Source of the DNA: Adineta vaga
Lineage: Eukaryota > Animalia > Rotifera
Assembly: GCA_021613535.1 (NCBI GenBank)
Contig: CP075494.1
Span: 15,066,001-15,130,000 of the forward strand
Length of the DNA: 64,000 bases
Direction: 5' to 3'
Shown: positions 15,201-43,320 of the stretch, piece by piece
How the letters are laid out: each line of letters opens with the position of its first letter
How positions within the stretch are numbered: position 1 is the stretch's first letter
Position numbers and translations under genes: made by a program
Notes under the pieces: generated by a model
Databases searched by the model: none
Seen by the model: the letters and a program-made list of their open reading frames with translations, nothing else
Told to the model about the DNA's origin: nothing

Positions 15201-17056
15201 GATGAAATTACACTTGATTTACAAAAGGAAAATACAAAATGGACAGGTTCATTTTGGGCAAAGTAATTCATTTATAAACTAATCTGTTATTCTTCTAATT
15301 GTTTTCGAAATAGAAATGGTGAACAATTTTCCATCTTTCCTCGATCGGATATTTGGTTATTTGAACCTGATCATCAAACAATCACAATATCATCGGATAC
15401 TTGTCAATCTAATCAAGTGAAATTTCTTGCTCGTCGCGGTCTTTTTATCAATGGTGTAACTGATCCACCTGTTACTGATGCGAATGTATCTTTATACACA
15501 ATTGCAAGTGAAAATACGAAAAATGATCAAACAATCGATGTTAATGGTAAATCAATGAATCTTCTTTTATCAACTTGGACGAAATCGGATGGTACTTATA
15601 CATTTGGTCCCTTATTAAACAGTCCTTCTTATCATGTTGTTATTCAAAAGACTGGTCATGTTTTCACACGAAAATCTTCATCATCATTATATGATTTTAA
15701 AACGGAAAAATTAGCTTCAATTCTTGTTCAAATCCAAGATATAGATGGTGTTTTTCTCTTATTAACTTCATCAACTAATAATATGCGTCGACGAACAGCA
15801 ACAACGGATAGTACAGGTGAAGTTTTATTCAGTGATTTACAATCAGGAAAATATTATTTACGTCCACAATTACGTGAATATAAATTTCATCCAGAAGATG
15901 CACATATTGAATTACAATCAGGTGATGAAGTTAAAACAAAATTTCAAGTTGAAAGAGTTGCATTTAGTTGTTACGGACAAATCACGTCACTTAACAATGA
16001 ACCCGAAAGTGGATTGATTATTGATGCAATTGGAATCGAACAATGTGAAAGTGTGACAAGAGAATCAGCTAAAACAGATATTAACGGGCAATTTCGTTTA
16101 CGTGCACTTCAACCTGGTTGTCGTTATCGTCTTCAATATCGTTCAAATCCAAGTGAATCAAGTCAAACGGATGTTTTACAAATCGAACCGAAAAATAAAA
16201 TCATTGAAATTATGAATGACGATGTCAATCATATTCATTTATATACAATTAAACGACCATCAGATGTTGATATCAATGTATTTATTCAAACACAAACACA
16301 ATTTCTTAATCAACTTAAAGTAAAATTTCACTTCTTCTTTTTCCGTATTTAACAAAACTCTTCTTTCAGGTGAAATTATACAAATCATCACAACGTGAAA
16401 GTCCAATACAAACAGTGACATTAACTAATTCACCATTTGCATATTTCAATTCAGTACCATTAGATAACGAAGTATGATTATCTTCTCAACACATTCGATG
16501 AATAAGTCTTCTATTTTTCTAGAGTTATATACTTCGCGTTGATTCACCATTATCGACAAGTGTTTACAATTACATTCAACCGGAAGTATCGTTTACTGCT
16601 AATCAAACTTTCTTATTTTTTACATTTAATTTTCAACCCCGAGTACGACAACTATCTTTTCAATCGATTGTTTTATTTATTTTTATGTTTAGTTGAAAAT
16701 TTATGATGGAGAAACTGGTTTAACTGGATCTTATTCAGCATTTATCATTGCTTTGATGATTATTGCATTGATATTCAAATATGAAACTGTAAGTTCGCTT
16801 CTTTTCGAAAATGACAATCAATATGTCTATTTAGATTCTTCCATTTGCTCGATCATTTTATGGATATGCTCGTGAAACTTTATTACCTAATTTGATCAAA
16901 AAATCTTCATCAGTTCTATCATCAAACCAAACAAATGATCAAAATAGCAAAGTAACATCATACAATACAGTCAATACAAAATCAACAACAAATCTTAATA
17001 ATGATAATGTTCCTTCAACAAATGAACCGAAACGACGAGCGAGAGTTGCTGATTAG
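12287..17056 (+). CDS. NOMO1: Nodal modulator (NOMO1-like), multi-exon
   Basis: SDVIGCGGFIKS, MIPVYERGEYMLKLLPPSGWSFEP, FVFKGFGLAG, GKYYLRPQLREYKFHP and RVAFSCYGQITSLNNEPE; C-terminal TM; stop TAG at 17054-17056. Confidence 0.92.
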
Positions 17057-18087
17057 GAAATTTTCATCATCATAAACAAGATCAAATACTCATTTCTGTC
17101 GAGTGATTCTTTTCGTTTTTCTTATGTCTAGTTCTCCATAGTCATGTTGTTTTTCGTCTTCTTGTTTTTTTCTTTAATACAAGTAAACGCTTTCGTTATG
17201 CAATTACCACCTTCAACAATTTTATAGTTTAGCTTTAAAAACACATAAATAACAGATACAATCATAACAAGAAAAACAAGAAAATTACACTACACTTTAA
17301 CTTCGCAAGTTAAGCTTGGTGAAATCTAATATTCGATTTCTTCCATTTTTATTTCCATATTTGATCAATTACGATCATTTTAGCATTTGAAAGACTTTGG
17401 GTATGACTTAATTCATATTTCCATAAAATACATGATTTTTCACTCTTAAGCGACAAATAATTATCAAAATTATTAGCATTATTAAAATGAAAATACGTGA
17501 AAATGTTATTTCAATTGGTCTTAATAAAACCAAGACTGATTCAATGATGAATATATAATTCTAATCGAGACAAAGATTTTCATCATTCCTTACTGAAATT
17601 CGAACGGTTGAAAATGAAATGAAATTCTATAATGAATTGTGATGATGAATATTGTTTTCTTAACTGATGTTGAATGGAAAAATGAAGATAATATTCATCA
17701 AATAAGAATTTTATTAAATAAACTTTGTTCATTTAATAAAATTAAGTCACCTGATTTTCTATTCATTCTAATAGGAAGTGGCTTTGTGCACTCAAGTAAG
17801 TGTAAGGAATTAATAAGGAAATATAAAACTGCTTTATTGTCTTACATATATTTCACTGTTAATATGAAGAAATTGTCTAAAATTTTTAATAAGTTTCTAT
17901 TGCACTCAAATAAAGTATAAAGCAAGCACTACAATCACATAAGTATTTCTTTTTGGATAATCTTGGTGATTAACGAGACTATGCTATTCATTTCATGTAC
18001 AAAGATATTTTGATGATTACTAAAATTTATGTTTCGAAGAATCACAATTTTATTTTATAAATCTTTGTAGTAGCAATCAGAACTAGG

Positions 18088-18131
18088 ACAAGTACAAGTA
18101 CCGCAAGTAAAAGTATTATACTTGTACTTGT
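18088..18131. repeat. 13-bp perfect inverted repeat (hairpin)
   Basis: acaagtacaagta (18088-18100) pairs with tacttgtacttgt (18119-18131). Confidence 0.7.
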
Positions 18132-19212
18132 AAAAAAGCATTTGTTAATTTTGTTCTCATTTCGTAAATCGCTAAATATGGAAGTTTTTATCTCTTTTCC
18201 TATGAGAATGGAAAAGAAAACCTTCTTCTACACAACACATCAACATTATTAGCTGTTTTCTTTTGAATCTAAAACAATGAAAAAAAGAACGAACAATCAC
18301 ATACTCTATAATTTTGGTCAAATGTATATCTTTTCTGATAAAAGAGAAAGTTCTTATCTGAAAACATCAAGTATTAAAAATAAAGAAAAAGAATTCATTC
18401 AGTTTTTCGTGTGGACTCAATAGTCATTTGTCTAATTATGCTAATGGATAATATCCGTTTACAATCGATTATTTTAAAATTTACAAGCTCGTCTTCCGAA
18501 TGACGTTTGAAAATGTCTACATTTTTATCTTGGTTGTGATGCAACACTCGTTTGAATTCTCATTGTTTGGATGCTGTGAAATTGTTCAAAGGTTATAGAT
18601 GACTATTATATGAGTTCGATATTTTTTGCAAATTTATTTAGAACATTTCAATCAAAATTGATCAAATCAATTCAGACAAAGTTTATCATTAATTGTGCCA
18701 GCTCTTTTCCACTAATGCTAAATATTACTTGTTAATTCATGTCAATTATAATTCTGTTTTTGTTAAAATACCAATATCATATGAAAAGGAATTTCCATTT
18801 AGTGTAATGTACATTCAACAACTAAATGTTCATTATCCTGTGTAGTTATTCGAACGCACAACATGAAAAACTTCAAAAGATCTAATATAGCCGGTTTCAC
18901 CGACACCTATAATGAATATATTCAAAAAGAAACATGTGCGAACTCGAGATAGAACGACTTCACCACTCGCATATCATTGGTACTCTTGTAATTCTCTTAA
19001 TGCCAATGAGAGCATAGAAATGGAATATAAGTACGGGTCACTATATAAACATGAAACATTCTTTATGTTTACAAATGCGTCTCGCCGCATTTCATTGAAA
19101 CTCGAATATATCGGAAACTGTATCCAGATGCGATTTATATCCTATATTGTGTCTCTACACATTTATTAGTCAAGACTAAGATGCACACTTTTCTCTAAAA
19201 GTTTCTTTTTTT

Positions 19213-19495
19213 TATCCCGGGACGATCGTTCCTGGAAGCAGTATTCCGCTTATTTCCGACGAAAACCCGCAGGATATCTATAGTTTCCGCGCTGGAAATC
19301 GCGAGAAAATACTCGCAATCCCGCTAAAGGAACCGGTGACCGTATCCGACTATCGGTTGTGGCAGGTTCTTGTTGGTTCCTGATAAAACCTGGTAAACTC
19401 AATAACAGGATCCGGTCGCCGAAATACTGCTTCCATGAAATCTCCGGAAGGTCCTGGAACTGGTCGGTTTCAGGTCGGATTGTTTGACCTGGATA
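19213..19495. mobile_element. GC-rich non-autonomous (MITE-like) element
   Basis: Abrupt GC rise. Internal inverted repeat ggaagcagtattccg (19234-19248) / cgaaatactgcttcc (19420-19434). Imperfect terminal complementarity tatcccggg / cctggata. Confidence 0.5.
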
Positions 19496-20183
19496 TGTTG
19501 AATGATGTACGAATACAAAACCTCTTTCTATCTTCAGACATCAAACGTCAAATTCAAGAAGCAACTCAATGAATTGGTAAAACTAGTTCTCCACTTTATC
19601 TTGACGCCAACCCCGACTCTCTAGCGTTTCAAATATACTAACGATTTGCGACGAACTCAGACATTAAACTAAACTCCATTATGAGAAATATTCAAAATAA
19701 AGTTCGACAGTATATTTTCCTACGCTTTTAATCACAAAATAATGTTTAAGAGAGAATTTCCCAGTCGTTCCCATAGATCAGCGGTGGCGATGACCCTACC
19801 GGACCCATTAAAAGGCTTATAAAACGAACCAACGGCTGTCCCTTTTCTTCATACCCTTTGCATTCTTCAAATTTTTTTAGGAGACATTATACTGAGCGTA
19901 CACAGTTTTAGAAAATGTGATACGATACACATACAACTTATCGAAAAACTGATAAACTAAATGCATTTCAAATACACGATTCTAGTTTCTCGGACTTACA
20001 CAAATCAATAACTTAGATGAACAGCCACTTACCACACTCCCAACTCAAGAGTTTACAACAAAACGCGCTATCATACGATTAATACGAATTCGAAGCACGA
20101 TATGCCTTTTTTTCCACCCATCAGTTTACTCTAAAAACTTGTCCAGAAACAAACACTGCAAAACAATGTCCCTTCAGCCCAAA

Positions 20184-22935
20184 CTAAAATTTCAACCTGT
20201 CTCCTGAAACATTTCGCAGGTATTCTACTACTGGATAGCCAATTTGATTGCCCTCAAGATCAAGTGTGATGAGTATCTAGAGACGAAAGAGAGAGAATCA
20301 ATGTGTCAGTTAGGTGAAGGGCGACTGATTATTACCGTATTCGTTAGCAAGGCATCACCAATATGTCGTGCTCCTTGTTCACCGATTTGATTGTACGCGA
20401 GATCTAGTGTGGTGAGTGTCTGGAAAGAACAGACAGCGTGGATCTTTCAATTAGGTGAAGAGTGGATGAGTTTTACCGTATTCGTTCGCAAGGCATCACC
20501 AATATGTTGTGCTCCTTGTTCACCGATTTGATTGTACGCGAGATCTAGTGTGGTGAGTGTCTGGAAAGAACAGAGAGCGTGGATCTTTCAATTAGGTGAA
20601 GAGTGAATGAGTTTTACCGTGTTTGTTCGCAAGGCATCCCCAATATGTTGTGCTGCTTGATGGCCGATTTGATTGCCCTCGAGATTTAGTCTGGTGAGTG
20701 TCTATAAACGAAAGAGAGAGCACGGATGTGTCAATTAAGTGAAGGGTGAATCAATATTACCGTGTTTGTTCGCAAGGCATCACCAATATGTTGTGCTCCT
20801 TGTTCCCCGATTGGATTGAACGTGAGATCTAGTGTGGTGAGTGTCTGGAGAGAACAGAAAGCGTGGATCTGTCAGTTAGGTGAAGAGTGAATGAGTTTTA
20901 CCGTGTTTGTTCGCAAGGCATCACCAATATGTTGTGCTGCTTGATGGCCGATTCGATTGTTGTAGAGATTTAGTGTGGTGAGTGTCTGGAGAGAACAGAG
21001 AGCGTGGATCTGTCAGTTAGGTGAAGAGTGGATGAGTTTTACCGTGTTTGTTCGCAAGGCATCCCCAATATGTTGTCCTCCTTGTTCACCGATTTCATTG
21101 GACCCAAGTTTGAGTGTGGTGAGTGTCTTGAGAGAACAGACAGCGTGGATCTTTCAATTAGGTGAAGAGTGGATGAATATTACCGTGTTTGTTCGCAAGG
21201 CATCACCAATATGTTGTGCTCCTTGTTCACCGATTTCATTGAACGTGAGATCTAGTGTGGTGAGTGTCTGGAAAGAACAGAAAGCGTGGATCTGTCAATT
21301 AGGTGAAGAGTGAATGAATATTACCGTGTTCGTTCGCAAGGCATCACTAATATGTTGTGCTCCTTGTTCACCGATTTGATTGCCCTCGAGATTTAGTGTG
21401 GTGAGTGTCTATAAACGAAAGAGAGAGCACGGATGTGTCAGTTAGGTGAAGGGTGAATGAATATTACCGTGTTTGTTCGCAAGGCATCACCAATATGTTG
21501 TGCTCCTTGTTCACCGATTTGATTGTGCCAGAGATCTAGTGTGGCGAGTGTCTGGAGAGAACAGAAAGCGTGGATCTGTCAGTTAGGTGAAGAGTGAATG
21601 AGTTTTACCGTGTTTGTTCGCAAGGCATCCCCAATATGTTGTGCTCCCTGTTCACCGATTTCACCGGACCCAAGTTTGAGTGTGGCGAGTGTCTGGAGAG
21701 AACAGAAAGCGTGGATCTGTCAGTTAGGTGAAGAGTGAATGAGTTTTACCGTGTTTGTTCGCAAGGCATCACCAATATGTTGTGCTGCTTGATGGCCGAT
21801 TCGATTGTTGTAGAGATTTAGTGTGGTGAGTGTCTTGAGAGAACAGAGAGCGTGGATCTGTCAGTTAGGTGAAGAGTGGATGATTTTTACCGTGTTTGTT
21901 CGCAAGGCATCCCCAATATGTTGTGCTCCCTGTTCACCGATTTCACCGGACCCAAGTTTGAGTGTGGTGAGTGTCTGGAGAGAACAGACAGCGTGGATCT
22001 GTCAGTTAGGTGAAAAGTGAATGAGTTTTACCGTGTTTGTTCGCAAGGCATCACCAATATTTTGTGCTCCTTGTTCACCGATTTGTTTGCTGTAGAGATT
22101 TAGTGTGGTGAGTGTCTAGGTATAGAATATTTAGTTCGATAATGTATGTTAGACAATCGAAAGTTTCGGGTTAGGTTTTTCAGCTGGAAATAGCATTATA
22201 GGAGGGTCGTGGTGGTAGTGTGTGGAAGAATTCAGAAAGTGTTTGGTTTGGATCCATGGTGCAAGAAAGGAAAAGTGAGTGCATGACTAATCATTACTGA
22301 GTGAATGTATGAATAGTCGATTGAAGAGTTTGACTAATGTACTGAATGTAATGATAGTAGTTTGTTTTGGATAGTTTAGGATTGAGATTTTTACCGTTGA
22401 TTTGCGAAAGATAGTATTGACTCGTTGCATCGTATAAAATAGTGTACTTTATTTAATTTGGTTGTTTTCAAAGATAGTTGTGCTATTTTAGGAGGTGCAA
22501 TGGCGACATTTGTATGAAATGGGAAAAGGTTTCTACAATTCTGCGGTTCTATTCTTGTTTGACACATGAGTGCACGTTGAATAAGATGTGTATTCTATGG
22601 ACATGGACAGAAAAGATCAGATGAAAGGAAGGGTTGTTTTTAGTAACATGAGTCAATATTGTGGTTGATTCACTCATGAAAAATGCTTCAGAATTGTGAA
22701 ATCTTTTTTTTTCGAGTGAACTCTTTAAGTTAGATATTACGAAGGTTATGTGTACCTGAGCAGATGAGAAAATAATTAAAACACTCAGAAGACTTACTTG
22801 ATAACGATGATAAACATTAAGGATTTGATTAAAGCGTTGGGAAACATTTTGCATCGAACAAAATAGTGTAAAATCAGTCATATGATCCAGAATCCGATAG
22901 ACGAGTTCGATGGGTAATGTTGAAAATGTGTACAT
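20184..22935 (-). CDS. F-box + RNI/NLRC3-type LRR protein: F-box exon 22798-22935, thirteen 84-nt LRR exons, terminal exon 20184-20276
   Basis: Exon 1 MYTFSTLPIELVYRILDHM...NVSQRFNQIL...YQ|gtaagt. Each following exon reads TLTTLxLxxNxIGEQGAQHIGDALRTNT between AG and GT. The last exon is ILITLDLEGNQIGYPVVEYLRNVSGDRLKF*. No internal stops. Confidence 0.88.
20277..22115 (-). repeat. Tandem array of 13 units of 141-143 bp (84-nt exon + 57/59-nt intron)
   Basis: Exons at 22032-22115, 21891-21974, 21750-21833, 21609-21692, 21468-21551, 21325-21408, 21184-21267, 21043-21126, 20902-20985, 20761-20844, 20618-20701, 20477-20560 and 20336-20419. Confidence 0.95.
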
Positions 22936-24146
22936 ATTCGCTTTAAGTTCCACGAAAGTTTGTTGAGAATGCAAGCTATTGAATATATTTTGTTTGTTAT
23001 GAATAGAAATTCGGTTTACTGAAAGTGTTGTATTTTTGTTATTGAAAAAAGAGAATGAAGTCTGACGATTTCAACTAAAGTGAATAGTTAGTTTATGCAG
23101 AAAGATGGCGTTAATGTATGTGTTGATTGGAGTTTCGGCTGCTGTGTATGATTATGAGCGTCATTATACTCTCAAGATACGTAGTTTTCATTAGTAATTT
23201 TTTGATTGTTACGAAAGAGTTCATTTTAAGAAAGGACATTTTTAGACGTGATATTCAACAAAAGTTCAATCAGAAAGGGAAATCTTTGATGGTAGATATC
23301 GATAGTTTCTTCTTTCCTTTTTCCGCCCACGTTTCACACCCTTATAAACTAATTTCATTCTATTAGTTCGACATAACTTAATTTTTATTTCACATACGTC
23401 TATCCTTAAAGATCTGAACAAGAAAATTAACTGAATTAAAGAAAATAAAGCGGGTTCATCTTATCGTGATGCGCCAGATAAATATAATCTATGAACAATT
23501 GGTGGTGTATCAGATATCCTCAAAAGCAAAAGAGAACACAGGAAATTATAAACTAACGTCGAGTCTCACTCTCACTCAGTTAACTGAGACTGTTGCATGT
23601 CTATGCGATCTTATCACTAAGATATTTTTATATGATTTGCTTATTACCCTACGTTTTTCATTGATTTCAATAGTGTTTAAACTAGACAGATTTTACTGTA
23701 TTTTATTTTTCTCAAACCTGATACTGGTTCGATTCTACCTATGTGTTCATTTATTGAATTATCATCTCTAGAATGATCAATAGTTCCTATTTTAATATTA
23801 CTAAACTTTTAATGATGTTATGAATAAATAACGACCGACTGATTGTAATCTCATATTATATCATATCTATCGAGAGCGCGTATTTAGCCCGTACTGAAGG
23901 GTATAGCAATATTTTTATGTTGTGCCGCCTTTAACTTTTGACCCTTAATCCTTCACGTTGACCCAACTCATCATCCTATCCTCGTCATACTCTCGGTTTC
24001 CAATGTTTAAGACAGTCTCGAAGAAAATATTTTTTTGACCTTTGACACTGACACAAAAGTACACAGAAACTTTTTTTTTCATATGACCCTCCTTTCAGTC
24101 GAAGGAATAAGGTGTGGATGTAAATGTTCCTTAACAGAGTACCCAC

Positions 24147-24334
24147 ACAAGGGGAAAGGCAGATCCTAGATCCTCATAGTTCGTGAGATCCTAGAATTCA
24201 TGATGACTCATTAGAACCCATGAGTATCTTTCAGGATCCACGATAGTCTGCCTTTTTGTGATGCTATGATCTATGAGGATCTATGGTGAGCCATGAGGAT
24301 CCGAAAGTTTTATAGGATCCGCTTTTCTCCTTGT
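24147..24334. mobile_element. MITE with 22-bp imperfect terminal inverted repeats
   Basis: acaaggggaaaggcagatccta (24147-24168) vs taggatccgcttttctccttgt (24313-24334), 19/22 complementary. Internal gatcct/aggatc repeats. An outer inverted pair gtgtggatgta / tacatccacac brackets it. Confidence 0.7.
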
Positions 24335-24372: not shown

Positions 24373-24987
24373 TTCAATTCGGTACCATTAGATAACTATG
24401 TACAATCATCTATTTTTCTAGAGTTATATACTTCGCGTTGATTCACCATTACCAACAAGTGTTTACAATTACATTCAACCTTAAGTATCGTTTACTGCCA
24501 ATCAAACTTTCTTATTTTTTACATTTAATTTTCAACCATGTAAGAAAATCCTCTCCAATCAATTCGTCTATTCAATTTCTTGTGATTCTTTAGTTGAAAA
24601 TTTATGAAGGAGTAACAGGTCTCGTCGAATCTTATTTAGCATTTATCATTGCATTGATATTCAAATATGGAACTGTTAGTCCACTTAATCAACTTGATTA
24701 TTTAGATTCTTCCATTTGCTCGATCATTTTATGGATATGCTGGTGAAACTTTCGTACCGAATACGATCAAAAAATCTTAATAATAATAATGTTGTTTTCA
24801 CAAATGAACCAAAGCGACGAGCAAGAATTGCTGATTACAAAATTTTCATTATCATACACGAGATCAAATACACATGTTTGTCGAGTCAAGTGATTCTTTT
24901 CGTTTCTTCTTATGTCTAGTCTAGTTCGCTATTAGTCATGCTATCCTTTTTCTTTAATGCAAGTAAACACTTTTGGTCTGCAATCAC
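24373..24987 (+). pseudogene. Degenerate direct duplicate of the NOMO 3' exons and 3'UTR (source ~16445-17205)
   Basis: Collinear with 16445-17205, including introns (e.g. gagttatatacttcgcgttgattcaccatt). CCG GAA has become CCT TAA (~24481), and there are several internal deletions. Confidence 0.88.
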
Positions 24988-25036
24988 ATCCTTTATATTC
25001 AAAACTTCACAACAACTAAAACCATTTACATCGATT

Positions 25037-27282
25037 TTAAACTTCTGAAGCTAGTCTAGGTGAATGTGGATCTTGATTTGCTGTTGACAAAGACATTTTC
25101 ATATCAGGTGAAATATTCATTGGTGGACTTGATTCTTCACCTAGGTATTAAAGAAAGTTTCTATATATAAATCATTCAATTGCAACATACTTTGTTTCAT
25201 TGATTCGATCGAAGGTGATTGAGATTCTCGAACAATAATCGAATGAACTCTTTGCTAAAATCAACAAATACAAAAGACTTCTCTGTATTCAAAAAATATT
25301 ACCGTCATTTTCGCTGTTGAAAGACGTTGTGCTTGACTTAATCCATATTTCTTTCCATAAAACAAATAATTTTTCATTCTTAAACAAAATTTCAAACGAC
25401 AAATAATCAAACTCAATGTTAACATTGCTAAAACAAAGATCGATGCAAAAGTTACAATGATCAGTTCAATTGGTCGTAAAAAAGTAGTGAAATTTGTTTG
25501 TTGAAATGATGATGTTGAATTGATTTGAATAAGAAAACAAGACTCATTTGAACGAGAGGAAGAAGAACAAAGTTCATATTGAGATAAAGATAAAGATGAA
25601 TTCGATTCAATAATATTCATTTGACAATCATCAATAAATATTTCATTTTCATCTTTCGATGAAATCACAAATGAAGAAAATGATAAAATCTTTGTATTTG
25701 TTCTCACAACTTGAAGTTGAGCCACAACACTTTTCATTGATAAATCATAAAGTGAATAATAAACATTTTCATGACAAAGATTTGAAGAAAAAGAAAATTG
25801 AAGAAGAATTTGTTGAGATAAAATTTGTTTTGTTAATTGATGTTGAATCGAAATGTGAAGAAAATAAATGATCGATTGATTGAATAAAGAAGGATTTGTC
25901 AATTGAAATGCATAAATATTCGTTTGATTCGAAGAAGAAGAAGAAGGAGGTGAAGAGGGAGAAAGAGAAAAGAGAGATTGAGAATCAATGAGAGAAAGAA
26001 AATATTGATCAGAGAAATAAAAAGAAGGAAGAATTTGAATGAAAAAAAGAATTTGATTTCTTTGTAAAAGTTCTTTCGGAGAGAAAAGAAAGGAATTCTG
26101 TTGAATTGATTGAATTGATGATGAAAAATTAAAATAATTCAATGAAAACATTTCAATTTGATCAAATAAACGAAAATAAATGGAACAATTTGTAATTGAA
26201 GATAAAAATTGTTTTGTTTTTAAATTAAAAAGTTGAATTTGAAAGAAAATCAAAGTTTGATTTAATAAAATTTGTTCATTTAATAAAATTAATTTTCCAT
26301 TTTCATTTATTTTAATATTATTTTCAATATTTTTATCTTTTATTTTATAAATAATATTATTAGATTTTTCATTAATTTCAATTTCACCAATTTCATTATT
26401 TTCTTTTAATAAATATTTCATTTGAATTATAAATTTATAATTTAATTTGAGAAAATGAATTCGTTGAATTTCAATTTGAATTTTCATTGAATTATTTAAT
26501 CTTTCTTCTCGACATTTTTCTTTTGGATTACAATCAAATGAATTTATAATTAATTCATAAAAATCTTTATTTTCATTTACAAATGAAAATTTTAATAAAA
26601 TTTGATCAAATTGATTGGAATTTTGTGATTTCGAAATTAAAATTAATTGAAATAAATTTGAACAATTTTTTTCTTTATTTTTATTAATTAATGAACAATC
26701 TAATTCATATTCAATATTATTATTTATTCCTTCATCTAAATCATTTGCACCTTCAATTGTTATTTGATATTTCATTTCTTCATTTTCTTTTAATTTTATT
26801 TCAATTAATTCATTTTTAAATTTGGGTTTATTATCATTGACACTTTAATTTGTTATAAATAAAATATTATTTTATAGAACAAAAAACAACAAATCAACAA
26901 CTTACTCAACAATATGAATTGGAATAACAAAATATCTTTGACCATCATTGATTAAAATATGAATTTCAATTAAACATGAAAAACGATCAAAACATTTTTT
27001 ACTTTGAACAAATTCTTCACGATCAATTTCTTCTTCTATTATCAAATGTTTATCTTTTATTCTAAAATATCTTCTTTCAAATCCACTTAAATTTAATAAA
27101 TAATATTTTGACATTTCTTCTTCTTCTTTTTCTTCTTCTTTTTCGTCATCGAATCGAAGAAGAATTGTACCAACCGGAAGATTTTCTTTCATTTCAATTG
27201 TTTCAAATGTTTTGATTGATGTTATGGATTCACTTACACGAATAATCATTATTAAAATTAATAAATAGTGTTCAAATAACAT
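25037..27282 (-). CDS. Divergent protocadherin-like type I membrane protein, copy A (4 exons)
   Basis: Signal peptide; ENLPVGT, IDREE, spliced DVNDNKPKF and ANDLDEG cadherin motifs; TM IIVTFASIFVLAMLTLSLIIC; tail ends RLASEV*. Confidence 0.78.
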
Positions 27283-40522: not shown

Positions 40523-43320
40523 CGGTATCGGCTAAATAACCTTTCTGCTATTGTATTTTCTTCGAATCAGAGAGAGAGAGAGAAAGAGAAAGAGAAGAAA
40601 AGTAGCAAAACAAATAGTTAGCGTTGCTTCATTGCATCTCTTGATGATCATCTGTTCAAATCATCTCAACATACAAATTATTTATCGACACACGCGCATT
40701 CAGACATTCTCTTTTCACAAATCAATAAGAACAACAACAACAAAGACAAGTTTCATATTCTTTCATCTTCTTCATTTACATAGATATGTTCAGAAAAGAG
40801 AGGTGATTTGTCTCTTCACGTCAAACTTCCGTTTTTTCCCTTTTCTTTTTCTGTACTTTTGTCGTTGTCATTATTTCAATTAATCAATCACTCGACGAAA
40901 CCTGTGTGTTCCTCTCGTTCGTCGATCGCCCATTCTTTGATGTTCACAGATTGGTCATTGTTGTGCGTGTGTCCAAAGTTAATAGTTAAAGAAGAAGACG
41001 ACGACAGACGTAAGACGGATTGATGAGTTGTGCGTGCTTTTGATTGTAGACATTGAAAGTGAGAATTGTTTAACTAAAGACGTGAATGAGTTAATTATTC
41101 TCTCTCTCACGCTTTGTGTTCAATATTGACTCATGTCATATAACGAAATGTTCGTAGAGAAGTTTATTTTTTTCTTTATATTTTAGATCATTAAAGCGTA
41201 TTCGATAAAGAATGTTATTTGAACACTATTTATTAATTTTAATAATGATTATTCGTGTAAGTGAATCCATAACATCAATCAAAACATTTGAAACAATTGA
41301 AATGAAAGAAAATCTTCCCGTTGGTACAGTTCTTCTTCGATTCGATGACGAAAAAGCAGAAGAAGAAGAAGAAGAAGAAATGTCAAAATATTATTTATTA
41401 AATTTAAGTGGATTTGAAAGAAGATATTTTAGAATAAAGGATAAACATTTGATAATAGAAGAAGAAATTGATCGTGAAGAATTTGTTCAAAGTAAAAAAT
41501 GTTTTGATCGTTTTTCATGTTTAATTGAAATTCATATTTTAATCAATGATGGTCAAAGATATTTCGTTATTCCAATTCATATTGTTGAGTAAGTTGATTT
41601 GTTGTTTTTTCTATAAAATAAGATTTTATTTATTTTATTTATAACAAATTAAAGTGTCAATGATAATAAACCCAAATTTAAAAATGAATTAATTGAAATA
41701 AAATTAAAAGAAAATGAAGAAATGAAATATCAAATAACAATTGAAGGTGCAAATGATTTAGATGAAGGAATAAATAATAATATTGAATATGAATTAGATT
41801 GTTCATTAATTAATAAAAATAAAGAAAAGAATTGTTCAAATTTATTTCAATTAATTTTAATTTCCAAATCACAAAATTCCAATCAATTTGATCAAATTTT
41901 ATTAAAATTTTCATTTGTAAATGAAAATAAAGATTTTTATGAATTAATTATAAATTCATTTGATTGTAATCCAAAAGAAAAATGTCGAGAAAAAAGATTA
42001 AATAATTCAATGAAAATTCAAATTGAAATTCAACGAATTCATTTTCTCAAATTAAATTATAAATTTATAATTCAAATGAAACATTTATTAAAAGAAAATA
42101 ATGAAATTGGTGAAATTCAAATAAATGAAAAATCCAATGATATTATTTATAAAATAAAAGATCAAAATATTGAAAATAATATTAAAATAAATGAAAATGG
42201 AAAATTAATTTTATTAAATGAACAAATTTTATTAAATCAAACTTTGATTTTCTTTCAAATTCAACTTTTTAATTTAAAAACAAAACAATTTTTATCTTCA
42301 ATTACAAATTGTTCCATTTATTTTCGTTTATTTGATCAAATTGAAATGTTTTCATTGAATTATTTTAATTTTTCATCATCAATTCAATCAATTCAACAGA
42401 ATTCCTTTCTTTTCTCTGATCAAGAACTTTTACAAAGAAATCAAATTCTTTTTTTCATTCAAATTCTTCCTTCTTTTTATTTCTCTGATCAATATTTTCT
42501 TTCTCTCATTGATTCTCAATCTCTCTTTTCTCTTTCTCCCTCTTCTTCTTCTCCTTCTTCGAATCAAACGAATATTTATTCATTTCAATTGACAAATCCT
42601 TCTTTATTCAATCAATCGATCATTTATTTTCTTCACATTTCGATTCAACATCAATTAACAAAACAAATTTTATCTCAACAAATTCTTCTTCAATTTTCTT
42701 TTTCTTCAAATCTTTGTCATGAAAATGTTTATTATTCACTTTATGATTTATCAATGAAAAGTGTTGTGGCTCAACTTCAAGTTGTGAGAACAAATGCAAA
42801 GATTTTATCATTTTCTTCATTTGTGATTTCATCGAAAGATGAAAATGAAATATTTATTGATGATTGTCAAATGAATATTATTGAATCGAATTCATCTTTA
42901 TCTTTATCTCAATATGAACTTTGTTCTTCTTCCTCTCGTTCAAATGAGTCTTGTTTTCTTATTCAAATCAATTCAACATCATCATTTCAACAAACAAATT
43001 TCACTTCTTTTTTACGCCCAATTGAAATGATCATTGTAACTTTTGCATCGATCTTTGTTTTAGCAATGTTAACATTGAGTTTGATTATTTGTCGTTTGAA
43101 ATTTTGTTTAAGAATGAAAAATTATTTGTTTTATGGAAAGAAATATGGATTAAGTCAAGCACAACGTCTTTCAACAGCGAAAATGACGGTAATAGTTTTT
43201 GAATACAGAGAAGTCATTTTGTATTTGTTGATTTTAGCAAAGAGTTCATTCGATTATTGTTCGAGAATCTCAATCACCTTCGATCGAATCAATGAAACAA
43301 AGTATGTTGCATTTGAATGA
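40523..43320 (+). repeat. Right arm of a ~2.8 kb near-identical inverted repeat
   Basis: Begins atcggctaaataacctttctgcta, the reverse complement of 27963-27986. Confidence 0.92.

What the first reader, a model, noticed from the sequence alone, without database searches (positions are those of the whole stretch)
20184..22935. F-box/LRR gene built as a cassette array of one-LRR exons with hypervariable, shuffled binding-face residues: candidate diversifying recognition system
Seen: after an F-box exon come 13 phase-0 exons of exactly 84 nt (28 aa, one RNI-type LRR each) and a capping exon. Framework residues are nearly invariant. The block following the LxxLxL strand switches among discrete variants: NLYSKQ, KLGSGE, NLYNNR, KLGSGE, DLWHNQ, NLEGNQ, DLTFNE, KLGSNE, NLYNNR, DLTFNP, NLEGNQ, DLAYNQ, DLAYNQ, DLEGNQ. 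These radical amino-acid changes sit next to introns that barely differ between units. Established: these positions form the concave ligand face of LRR solenoids, and F-boxes couple substrates to SCF ubiquitin ligases. Inference: this is an intracellular receptor whose specificity is reprogrammed by unit shuffling, gene conversion and exon skipping, since any subset of exons stays in frame. It may act as an adaptable anti-pathogen or anti-foreign-protein degrader, analogous to exon-shuffled LRR genes of brown algae or VLR cassettes.
Basis: partly seen in the sequence, partly recalled or inferred. Interest (0 to 1): 0.9.

Follow-up and report, generated by a model that had tools for sequence, protein, structure and literature searches.

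The report
Rotifer F-box gene with LRR cassettes
This is an intact Adineta vaga gene for an F-box protein whose 14 leucine-rich repeats are each encoded by one small exon and vary almost only on the ligand-binding face; it is one of about 50 close copies of a fast-evolving family that looks like a germline repertoire of protein-degradation receptors, not a unique or self-rearranging locus.

Summary
On the minus strand lie an F-box exon, a 682-nt intron, 13 phase-0 exons of 84 nt separated by 57- or 59-nt GT..AG introns, and a 30-codon cap exon, giving an open 440-codon model.

Between the 13 units, codons 6, 8, 9 and 11 differ at 49% of non-synonymous sites. Introns differ at 7% and framework non-synonymous sites at 3%. 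In a fold model these codons lie on the beta-strand and the following loop of a ribonuclease-inhibitor/NLR-type solenoid. The F-box passes Pfam's cut-off. It is predicted to dock on the animal's own SKP1, with score 0.83 against 0.02 for the best control.

The locus is not unique:
- The genome is Adineta vaga.
- At least 47 loci carry an F-box exon 80% or more identical.
- At least 435 cassettes exist genome-wide.
- Arrays hold 1 to 23 units.
- Genes only 4-7% apart share almost no variable blocks.

The gene sits inside a dispersed repeat. Related copies are 8.6-10.9 kb units with fixed ends and no transposase.

Germline shuffling and diversifying selection are supported. Somatic reprogramming and exon skipping are not shown. 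The immune role is inference.

The scan's first readers noted the same architecture at least 17 times elsewhere in this genome, and none of those notes was followed up.

The parts
22798..22935 (-). Exon 1: F-box, 46 codons, ATG at 22935, followed by donor GTAAGT
   Evidence: Pfam F-box scores 21.3 bits against a cut-off of 20.5, E = 2.5e-4. Diversity by codon position across 17 paralogs is .029/.023/.082, which indicates purifying selection. Predicted docking on A. vaga SKP1 scores 0.83 against 0.02 for the best control.
22116..22797 (-). Intron 1, 682 nt. It holds a long read-through frame that is not coding.
   Evidence: There is no codon periodicity of substitutions (.107/.115/.099), and diversity equals neutral levels. 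The spacing to the first LRR exon is about 808 nt in most paralogs.
22032..22115 (-). LRR exon 1 (block NLYSKQ)
21891..21974 (-). LRR exon 2 (KLGSGE)
21750..21833 (-). LRR exon 3 (NLYNNR, H..A variant). Its exon and the first 30 nt of its following intron are identical to those of unit 9.
21609..21692 (-). LRR exon 4 (KLGSGE)
21468..21551 (-). LRR exon 5 (DLWHNQ), followed by a 59-nt intron
21325..21408 (-). LRR exon 6 (NLEGNQ)
21184..21267 (-). LRR exon 7 (DLTFNE)
   Evidence: Pfam LRR_6 scores 23.4 bits, exactly at the cut-off.
21043..21126 (-). LRR exon 8 (KLGSNE)
20902..20985 (-). LRR exon 9 (NLYNNR, H..A variant)
20761..20844 (-). LRR exon 10 (DLTFNP), followed by a 59-nt intron
20618..20701 (-). 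LRR exon 11 (NLEGNQ, H..A variant). It is a chimera: the 5' part resembles unit 6 and the 3' part resembles units 3 and 9.
   Evidence: Upstream-context distance to unit 6 is 1. Downstream distance to units 3 and 9 is 3, against 7 to unit 6.
20477..20560 (-). LRR exon 12 (DLAYNQ)
   Evidence: Pfam LRR_6 scores 23.6 bits.
20336..20419 (-). LRR exon 13 (DLAYNQ, most diverged framework), followed by a 59-nt intron
20184..20276 (-). Cap exon: 30 codons plus stop TAG. It encodes a last LRR strand (DLEGNQ) and a C-terminal cap of the family type ..YLRN..G.RL..
   Evidence: The cap is conserved in most paralogs. Its acceptor at 20276 is used in a spliced contig of run X3, which also covers 20103-20276 without a mismatch.
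18139..24318 (-). Extent of the stretch alignable to the paralogous loci: the gene plus about 1.4 kb upstream and about 2 kb downstream. It is an internal part of the dispersed 8.6-10.9 kb unit, and the unit's termini are not found here.
19212..19493 (.). 282-nt stretch in the 3' flank that the paralogs lack. It has 20-nt inverted arms at 19229-19248 and 19420-19439. It is probably a small insertion.

Best explanation
The locus is an intact, expressed gene of Adineta vaga for a roughly 440-residue intracellular protein.

Its N-terminal F-box docks on SKP1 and so plugs into an SCF-type ubiquitin ligase. This step is inferred from motif and model.

Its C-terminal solenoid has 14 ribonuclease-inhibitor/NLR-type leucine-rich repeats. 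The solenoid presents a concave sheet and loop face whose residues differ from repeat to repeat and from gene to gene. These are unit positions 6, 8, 9 and 11, and partly 14.

The gene belongs to a bdelloid-specific family with at least 47 close paralogs and at least 435 cassettes in this genome. Every repeat is a 141-bp module of an 84-nt phase-0 exon plus a 57- or 59-nt intron. Unequal recombination between these near-identical modules adds, deletes and recombines repeats without breaking the frame. Selection keeps or drives diversity at the ligand-facing codons.

The family thus forms a germline-encoded, fast-turning repertoire of substrate receptors. It most likely marks variable non-self or conflict proteins (pathogen, virus, transposon or horizontally acquired proteins) for ubiquitination. 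New gene copies arise by spread of a discrete 8.6-10.9 kb unit that holds the whole gene.

Shown here: the anatomy, family size, selection pattern, array turnover and fold class.

Inferred: the ligase function, the nature of the targets and the means of dispersal.
For: Anatomy and open frame:
- Searches give the exon layout and the open frame.
- The F-box is over Pfam's cut-off, and single exons hit LRR_6.
- The F-box exon is under purifying selection across paralogs, at .029/.023/.082 by codon position.

Selection pattern:
- Within this array, variable codons show pN 0.486 and pS 0.081. Framework codons show pN 0.027 and pS 0.154. Introns show 0.073.
- Thirteen paralog arrays show the same pattern: pooled 0.362/0.180 for variable codons against 0.053/0.132 for framework.
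- Synonymous diversity in the variable codons is not raised. Selection therefore fits better than local hypermutation.

Family:
- 233 units carry 112 distinct blocks, and entropy peaks at positions 8, 9, 11, 14 and 6.
- All nine blocks of this gene are private to it among the 21 genes compared.
- At least 15 of 21 copies are intact through up to 23 exons, with a conserved cap.
- Genes 4-7% apart in exon 1 plus intron 1 differ 4 against 20 units and share 0-12% of blocks.
- The 22-nt framework motif has 435 matches in the genome and none for the control pattern.
- 47 loci have an F-box exon at 80% or more.

Fold: the LRR part has pLDDT 80-92. The strand covers unit positions 4-8 and the helix 14-26. 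The best matches are NLRP14, NOD2, NLRP3 and ribonuclease inhibitor.

SKP1 docking: score 0.83 against 0.02 for the best of 3 controls, partner pLDDT at least 84, and runs agreeing in at least 88% of contacts. That mark was reached by 51 of 78 solved complexes and 2 of 108 mismatched pairs. The interface lies on SKP1 residues 97-160.

Expression: a spliced contig uses the cap-exon acceptor and matches this copy's 3' end without a mismatch.

Distribution: spliced gene models of the same architecture exist in A. ricciae, A. steineri and Rotaria magnacalcarata.
Against: - No full-length transcript was seen. The only splice evidence is one 204-nt contig from a run whose RNA nature is a guess.
- No substrate, no infection response and no ligase activity are known.
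- The SKP1 pass may come from the model's memory of solved Skp1-F-box complexes.
- In the one pair of arrays that can be aligned unit by unit (L027/L028, 1.5% apart), the variable codons differ 0.036 per nt against 0.023 in introns. That is not a significant excess, so fast change at these codons is not seen on the shortest time scale.
- Comparisons between repeats are confounded by gene conversion.
- This copy is 21% diverged from its nearest sampled paralog and lacks the unit's termini.
Confidence: 0.6

Rival explanations
1. This is an ordinary regulatory SCF adaptor family. The proteins target the animal's own proteins, for example in development, stress or desiccation proteostasis. The diversity would then reflect subfunctionalisation after duplication, not conflict with non-self.
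For: The F-box and SKP1 docking say nothing about what the target is. Bdelloids have many expanded repeat-protein families (PMC3846280). The closest aligned pair of arrays shows no significant excess at the variable codons.
Against: The non-synonymous excess at ligand-facing codons is 4-7 times intron divergence. Block sets are private to each gene, and arrays are almost wholly replaced between genes 4-7% apart. Such turnover is unusual for receptors of conserved self substrates.
Confidence: 0.15
2. The gene is selfish cargo. It serves the dispersed 8.6-10.9 kb unit that carries it, for example by degrading a host silencing or restriction factor as viral F-box proteins do, or by acting as a drive or toxin-antidote part.
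For: Related copies have identical 5' and 3' termini next to unrelated flanks. At least 20-25 copies are 93-96% alike. The F-box/LRR gene is the only long coding feature in the unit.
Against: There is no transposase or reverse transcriptase, no terminal repeats, no target-site duplication and no hammerhead. The transposable-element nature of the unit is therefore unproven. The same architecture occurs in Rotaria and other Adineta species, which points to an old host family. The window's copy lacks the termini.
Confidence: 0.12
3. The gene is neutral repeat DNA: a decaying or functionless copy in which the tandem 141-bp repeat merely mimics a gene.
For: It lies in a dispersed repeat. This copy is truncated relative to the full unit. 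The public annotation mostly lacks or mis-models these genes.
Against: All 15 exons are open, with GT..AG at all 14 introns. The F-box and the framework codons are under purifying selection. The cap exon is conserved, and most paralogs are intact through up to 23 exons. There is a spliced contig specific to this copy.
Confidence: 0.08
4. Diversification is programmed within the animal. The array would be rearranged somatically (VLR-like copy choice), or read out as many isoforms by regulated exon skipping, so that one gene yields many specificities.
For: Every internal exon is 84 nt and phase 0, so any subset stays in frame. One contig joins the cap exon to a 25-nt anchor placed at the end of exon 12, which would skip exon 13.
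Against: That anchor has one mismatch to exon 12, and exons 12 and 13 differ by one base there. Normal splicing explains it equally well. The gene is complete in the germline. No orphan cassettes lie in the window, and the first 100 genome matches listed all lie beside F-box exons. No read evidence of rearranged DNA was seen.
Confidence: 0.05

Closest known systems
Ectocarpus LRR-ROCO and NB-ARC-TPR genes with one repeat per exon (Zambounis et al. 2012, PMC3341825; PMC11378527)
   Same: There is one repeat per small phase-0 exon of fixed length. Exon order is not conserved between recent paralogs, and local duplications occur within arrays. Diversifying selection acts on concave-face residues. 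The genes are proposed as a germline way to evolve new recognition specificities (here).
   Different: This one is in an animal, not a brown alga. The unit is a 28-residue RI-type repeat (84 nt), not a 24-residue repeat (72 nt). The output domain is an F-box (degradation), not a ROC-COR GTPase or NB-ARC. The introns are very short (57 or 59 nt) and are homogenised with the exons. The whole gene rides in a dispersed unit with fixed ends.
Expanded, positively selected F-box families of nematodes and plants (for example C. elegans; PMC8120010, PMC8665587)
   Same: Both have a conserved F-box joined to a fast-evolving substrate-binding part. Both are large lineage-specific expansions. The same hypothesis, that they target foreign proteins for proteolysis, has been put forward for them.
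   Different: In nematodes the variable part is an FTH/FBA2 or other domain, not a cassette array. Their diversity arises by point substitution and gene birth and death, not by re-sorting of exon-sized repeat modules.
FBXL proteins (SKP2, FBXL2/3, TIR1): F-box plus LRR substrate receptors of SCF ligases
   Same: Both have an N-terminal F-box followed directly by an LRR solenoid, and predicted SKP1 docking through the usual SKP1 C-terminal helices.
   Different: FBXL repeats are the shorter cysteine-containing type (from established knowledge). Here the repeats are 28 residues, RI/NLR type, by period, Pfam LRR_6 and fold. FBXL genes are few, conserved and single-copy.
Ribonuclease inhibitor and NLR LRR domains
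   Same: They give the best fold matches and have the 28-29-residue strand-helix unit. Their genes are also built of repeat-sized in-frame exons (from my own knowledge, not tested here).
   Different: RI and NLR exons encode a pair of repeats (57 residues), and there is no F-box. Their arrays are stable in number.
Penelope-mediated spread of intron-containing host genes in A. vaga (Arkhipova et al. 2013, PMC3846280)
   Same: That paper reports that intron-bearing members of multigene families, including an LRR gene, can be copied to new sites. It also notes that LRR families are amplified beyond the copy numbers of transposable elements.
   Different: No pLTR-like terminal repeats, no target-site duplication and no hammerhead motif were found in or around the unit studied here.

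Membership tests
F-box protein (SCF substrate receptor) | F-box motif recognised by the family profile | tested here: met
   PF00646 scores 21.3 bits against a cut-off of 20.5, E = 2.5e-4, covering residues 4-40 of exon 1. The margin is small because the exon is short.
F-box protein (SCF substrate receptor) | Binds SKP1 through the SKP1 C-terminal helices | tested here: met
   In silico only. The score is 0.83 against 0.02 for the best of 3 controls, partner pLDDT is at least 84, and the runs agree in at least 88% of contacts. The mark was reached by 51 of 78 solved complexes and 2 of 108 mismatched pairs. The interface lies on SKP1 residues 97-160. The pass may reflect memory of solved Skp1-F-box complexes. 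It shows likeness, not binding.
F-box protein (SCF substrate receptor) | Assembles with CUL1/RBX1 and drives ubiquitination of a bound substrate | not testable with these tools
   This needs biochemistry.
FBXL subfamily (F-box plus cysteine-containing LRR) | LRRs of the short cysteine-containing type | tested here: not met
   The repeats are exactly 28 residues with an LxxLxLxxNxIGxxGA..I..AL..N. consensus. The fold matches best to NLR and ribonuclease-inhibitor LRRs.
RI/NLR-type LRR (Pfam LRR_6) | 28-29-residue unit with a strand, a loop and a helix, forming a horseshoe | tested here: met
   Single exons hit LRR_6 at 23.4 and 23.6 bits (cut-off 23.4); the others score below it. A model of the homolog P0153:1-245 shows alternating strands and helices at pLDDT 80-92. 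Foldseek gives E values down to 2e-12 to NLRP14, NOD2, NLRP3 and RI. The window's own joined protein was not folded.
Exon-per-repeat 'shuffling' receptor genes (Ectocarpus type) | Each repeat in one exon of fixed length with symmetric phase 0 | tested here: met
   There are 13 exons of 84 nt, all on codon boundaries. The same holds in 20 paralogs.
Exon-per-repeat 'shuffling' receptor genes (Ectocarpus type) | Exon order and number not conserved between recent paralogs | tested here: met
   Arrays hold 1-23 units. Pairs 4-7% apart share 0-12% of blocks. The pair 1.5% apart differs by 5 unit indels.
Exon-per-repeat 'shuffling' receptor genes (Ectocarpus type) | Excess non-synonymous change at concave-face positions | tested here: met
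   pN is 0.486 against intron 0.073 and pS 0.081 in this array; the pooled values are 0.362 against 0.180. The comparison is between repeats, so gene conversion confounds it. No site-model test was run.
VLR-like somatic assembly system | Incomplete germline gene flanked by donor cassettes that lack their own start | tested here: not met
   The gene is complete. There are exactly 13 framework motifs in the 64-kb window, all inside the gene. The first 100 genome matches listed all lie 1-5 kb from an F-box exon.
Transposable element carrying a cargo gene | Many dispersed copies with the same termini next to unrelated flanks | tested here: met
   This holds for the paralogs. The 5' end starts at nt 1-4 in at least 25 loci, and the 3' end stops at nt 395-398 in at least 20 loci, at 93-96% identity. 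Eight paired copies have unrelated flanks. The window's own copy lacks both termini.
Transposable element carrying a cargo gene | Terminal repeats, target-site duplication, or an encoded transposase or reverse transcriptase | tested here: not met
   No terminal direct or inverted repeats were found. No target-site duplication is seen in 8 paired ends. There is no ORF over 125 residues outside the gene. No hammerhead or other Rfam match was found.

The most novel reading that the evidence does not exclude
Bdelloid rotifers hold a germline repertoire of evolvable degraders. Each is a self-contained F-box/LRR gene whose 141-bp exon-intron cassettes re-sort by recombination. The genes are multiplied around the genome by a discrete 9-11 kb mobile unit of unknown class. 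On this reading an ancient asexual animal gains receptor diversity against pathogens, viruses or foreign proteins without sex. Alternatively, the mobile unit carries its own ubiquitin-ligase adaptor as a counter-defence.
Probability: 0.2. Interest if true: 0.8.

Novelty: new variant of a known kind. Interest (0 to 1): 0.6.

Why it matters
Bdelloid rotifers are the textbook ancient asexuals, and how they keep up with coevolving pathogens is an open question. I found no paper that describes this family. It has about 50 close genes and at least 435 cassettes. It combines a ubiquitin-ligase adaptor with an NLR-type binding surface that is diversified by module re-sorting and by selection. It is therefore a concrete, testable candidate for an intracellular recognition repertoire in these animals.

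It would also be the first animal counterpart of the exon-shuffled LRR receptors of brown algae. It further shows a gene family spreading as a discrete unit with fixed ends but no recognisable transposon features.

In practical terms, the public annotation seems to miss or mis-model these genes, so they are absent from the expression and infection studies done so far.

Tried and rejected
1. Coding read-through of intron 1. A 141-codon open frame runs past the donor, and GenBank's ADD91459.1 model uses such a read-through. I rejected it because substitutions among 17 paralogs show no codon periodicity there, and spliced models in other species join the F-box straight to the first LRR.
2. Penelope-mediated mobilisation (PMC3846280). 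No hammerhead, no pLTR-like repeats and no target-site duplication were found.
3. TIR, LTR or Helitron ends. None were recognised.
4. The search for homologous proteins on the F-box region of P0151 gave a single candidate, which was uninformative.
5. The look-up of encoding contigs for P0003 found nothing on record.
6. Reads. Only Logan contigs were available and no raw RNA reads. One spliced contig was found and no full-length transcript. The DNA-like runs X2 and X4 cover the introns contiguously.
8. Local hypermutation of the variable codons. This is unlikely because their synonymous diversity is not raised.
Exons were searched one by one by reference. The fold used a natural homolog (P0153:1-245), and the complex used exon 1 alone.
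Full report
**1. Observation**

The gene lies on the minus strand. Exon 1 (22935..22798) starts with ATG, encodes 46 residues and ends at a GTAAGT donor. After 682 nt come 13 exons of exactly 84 nt. Each starts and ends on a codon boundary. The introns that follow them are 57 nt (ten) or 59 nt (three), all GT..AG. A final exon of 30 codons ends in TAG at 20186..20184.

Tandem Repeats Finder gives period 141, 13.3 copies and 85% matches. A 27-nt framework motif is found 13 times in the window and never in 100 shuffles.

The open model has 46 + 13x28 + 30 = 440 codons. Exons were searched one by one by reference, and natural homologs were used where a longer chain was needed.

**2. Where the variation sits**

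Among the 13 exons, differences are confined to codons 6, 8, 9, 10 and 11, plus a linked E..G / H..A pair at codons 14 and 16.
- Of the 18 nt in codons 6-11, 13 are polymorphic.
- The rest of the exon has 16 of 66 polymorphic (P = 4e-4).
- The 57-nt introns have 9 of 57 (P = 1.6e-5).

Nei-Gojobori-type proportions over all unit pairs:

| Site class | pN | pS | p |
|---|---|---|---|
| Variable codons 6, 8, 9, 11 | 0.486 | 0.081 | |
| Framework codons | 0.027 | 0.154 | |
| Introns | | | 0.073 |

The ligand-facing codons are thus about seven times more diverged than the introns beside them, while their synonymous sites are not raised. That argues for selection and against a local mutator. The same pattern holds in 13 paralog arrays: pooled 0.362/0.180 for variable codons against 0.053/0.132 for framework.

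The caveat is that these are comparisons between repeats that exchange sequence.

**3. Domains and fold**

- Exon 1 passes Pfam's F-box cut-off (21.3 against 20.5 bits). Single LRR exons hit LRR_6, two of them at the cut-off.
- I folded a natural homolog (A. steineri, P0153 residues 1-245: F-box plus seven units). The LRR part has pLDDT 80-92. The strand covers unit positions 4-8 and the helix positions 14-26. Positions 6 and 8 therefore point out of the concave sheet, 9 and 11 lie in the loop after it, and 14 lies at the helix start.
- Foldseek's best matches are NLRP14, NOD2, NLRP3, ribonuclease inhibitor and axonemal LRR proteins. This is the RI/NLR class, not the shorter cysteine-containing class of FBXL proteins.
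- SKP1 docking was tested in silico. The animal's own SKP1 (P0160, found) was folded with exon 1. The score was 0.83 against 0.02 for the best of three controls. Partner pLDDT was at least 84, and the runs agreed in at least 88% of contacts. That mark was reached by 51 of 78 solved complexes and 2 of 108 mismatched pairs. The interface lies on SKP1 residues 97-160. Because Skp1-F-box complexes are solved, this shows likeness, not binding.

**4. Organism and family**

The genome has 100.8 Mb in six contigs. Proteins that match are labelled Adineta vaga, and one sits on a contig of the same length as contig 4.
- The F-box exon has 145 matches in the genome, a lower bound. Of these, 47 are 80% or more identical.
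- A 22-nt framework motif has 435 matches and the control pattern none. The first 100 listed all lie beside F-box exons.
- I fetched twenty paralogs. Most show the same plan, with 1 to 23 units and a conserved 30-codon cap. At least 15 of 21 are intact throughout.
- Across 233 units there are 112 different blocks at positions 6-11. Entropy peaks at positions 9 (3.12 bits), 8 (2.95), 11 (2.16), 14 and 6. The common residues there are Y, W, R, E, D, N and G. All nine blocks of this gene are private to it among the 21 genes compared.
- Introns differ 0.084 within genes and 0.162 between genes, so arrays evolve in concert.
- Across 17 paralogs the F-box exon shows purifying selection (.029/.023/.082 by codon position). 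Intron 1 shows no coding signal despite its long open frame.
- Named relatives are all bdelloids: A. ricciae, A. steineri and Rotaria magnacalcarata. Their spliced models join the F-box directly to 28-residue repeats.
- More distant F-box genes in this genome are intronless and lack the array.

**5. How the array changes**

- Units with the same block are also nearest neighbours in their flanks. For example, units 3 and 9 are identical in the masked exon plus the first 30 nt of the following intron, and units 2, 4 and 8 differ by 3-4. The 'shuffled discrete variants' are therefore mostly duplicated units.
- The 59-nt intron type always precedes an xLEGNQ exon (units 6 and 11, and the cap).
- Unit 11 is a chimera: its 5' part is like unit 6 and its 3' part is like units 3 and 9.
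- Between genes, turnover is fast. Pairs only 4-7% apart in exon 1 plus intron 1 have 4 against 20 or 20 against 11 units and share 0-12% of blocks. The closest pair (1.5% apart) differs by five unit indels.
- In that closest pair, aligned units differ 0.036 per nt at the variable codons against 0.023 in introns, which is not significant.
- Nearest-unit distances in other pairs are 1.2 to 5 times the intron value.
- Germline re-sorting is therefore clear. Accelerated substitution is likely but not shown on the shortest time scale.

**6. Expression**

Only assembled contigs of public runs could be laid. One 204-nt contig of run X3 (kind guessed as RNA) covers 20103-20276 without a mismatch. It then jumps with GT..AG ends to a 25-nt anchor placed at the end of exon 12, with one mismatch.

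Exons 12 and 13 differ by one base in that stretch. The contig therefore proves use of the cap acceptor in a copy-specific transcript. It cannot tell normal splicing from skipping of exon 13. No full-length transcript was seen.

**7. An unexpected context**

- The whole locus from 24318 to 18139 aligns with the paralogous loci at 80-89%, non-coding parts included.
- Among the main subfamily the shared unit is 8.6-10.9 kb, with sharp, identical ends next to unrelated flanks.
- The 5' end starts at nt 1-4 in at least 25 loci. The 3' end stops at nt 395-398 in at least 20 loci, at 93-96% identity.
- The unit has no other long ORF, no terminal repeats, no visible target duplication and no hammerhead.
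- Arkhipova et al. 2013 (PMC3846280) reported that Penelope elements can move intron-bearing host genes, including an LRR gene, and that LRR families are amplified in A. vaga. I found no Penelope signature here.
- The window's copy is an old member, 21% from its nearest sampled relative. It lacks both termini.

**8. Comparison and novelty**

- The design principle of one repeat per phase-0 exon, scrambled order and selected concave face is that of the Ectocarpus ROCO/NB-ARC genes (PMC3341825).
- The idea of fast-evolving F-box adaptors aimed at foreign proteins is established for nematodes and plants.
- New here: the combination in an animal, the RI/NLR-type unit, the co-homogenised mini-introns, the scale of the family, and its spread as a discrete unit.
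- Searches of the paper library for bdelloid or Adineta together with F-box or LRR found no description of the family.
- The first readers of this scan flagged the same architecture at least 17 times elsewhere in this genome, and none of those notes was followed up.

**9. Verdict**

The gene is best read as one member of a germline repertoire of SCF-type substrate receptors. The repertoire is diversified by cassette recombination and by selection. Somatic reprogramming is unsupported, exon skipping is untested, and the immune role is inferred.

Noticed in passing
L035:8517 to L036:3447 (genome C4:13248416-13259347), and at least 20 other loci: A dispersed unit of 8.6-10.9 kb has fixed 5' and 3' ends and unrelated flanks. 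It holds the whole F-box/LRR gene plus about 1.85 kb upstream and about 5.5 kb downstream. It has no other long ORF, no terminal repeats and no target-site duplication. Its class and its way of spreading are unknown.
   Followed up: partly
Genome loci such as C5:2517022-2517173, C5:2581557-2581700 and C1:14448920-14449094: The first roughly 180 nt of the unit's 5' end also occur on their own at 10 or more other places, at 80-92% identity. These could be solo ends or the ends of a related, perhaps autonomous, element.
   Followed up: no
window 18069-18138: Directly beyond the point where similarity to the family stops lies a roughly 60-nt palindromic short repeat. It recurs at 10 or more loci at 85-93% identity. 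It may mark an insertion or break that truncated this copy.
   Followed up: no
window 24406-24993 and 16507-17213: The host DNA on the two sides of the F-box locus is a direct duplicate at about 79% identity. Further related pieces lie at about 25817-26317 and 42180-42674. This looks like a local duplicated host region around the insertion.
   Followed up: no
L063-L066 (genome C1:4245300-4247800, C6:11757000-11759100, C4:7790800-7792800, C2:14962300-14964300): These are intronless genes of 444-567 codons. They carry a related F-box (..LP.E....I...LD......S..NV..R.N.I...Y.RY..) but no regular 28-residue array. They form a second, large F-box family in the same genome.
   Followed up: partly
genome C1:6817565-6819328: An array beside another F-box exon has a unit spacing of 147 nt, not 141. 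It is a subfamily with longer introns or exons.
   Followed up: no
P0003 (UJR34376.1), P0151 (ADD91459.1), P0154 (A. ricciae): Public gene models of family members look faulty. One ends at the F-box exon after an unrelated N-terminal part. One reads through intron 1. One fuses a Tc1-like transposase fragment to the F-box exon. The family is probably under-annotated.
   Followed up: partly
L035:1725-1802 (genome C4, about 6.7 kb upstream of a paralog's unit): A mir-9/mir-79-like hairpin scores 52 bits, E = 2e-7, below Rfam's gathering score of 58.6.
   Followed up: no
window 20001-22000: The array has 44.5% G+C in a window that averages about 30%. The mini-introns themselves are about 41% G+C. 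This could reflect GC-biased gene conversion or constraint on the introns.
   Followed up: no
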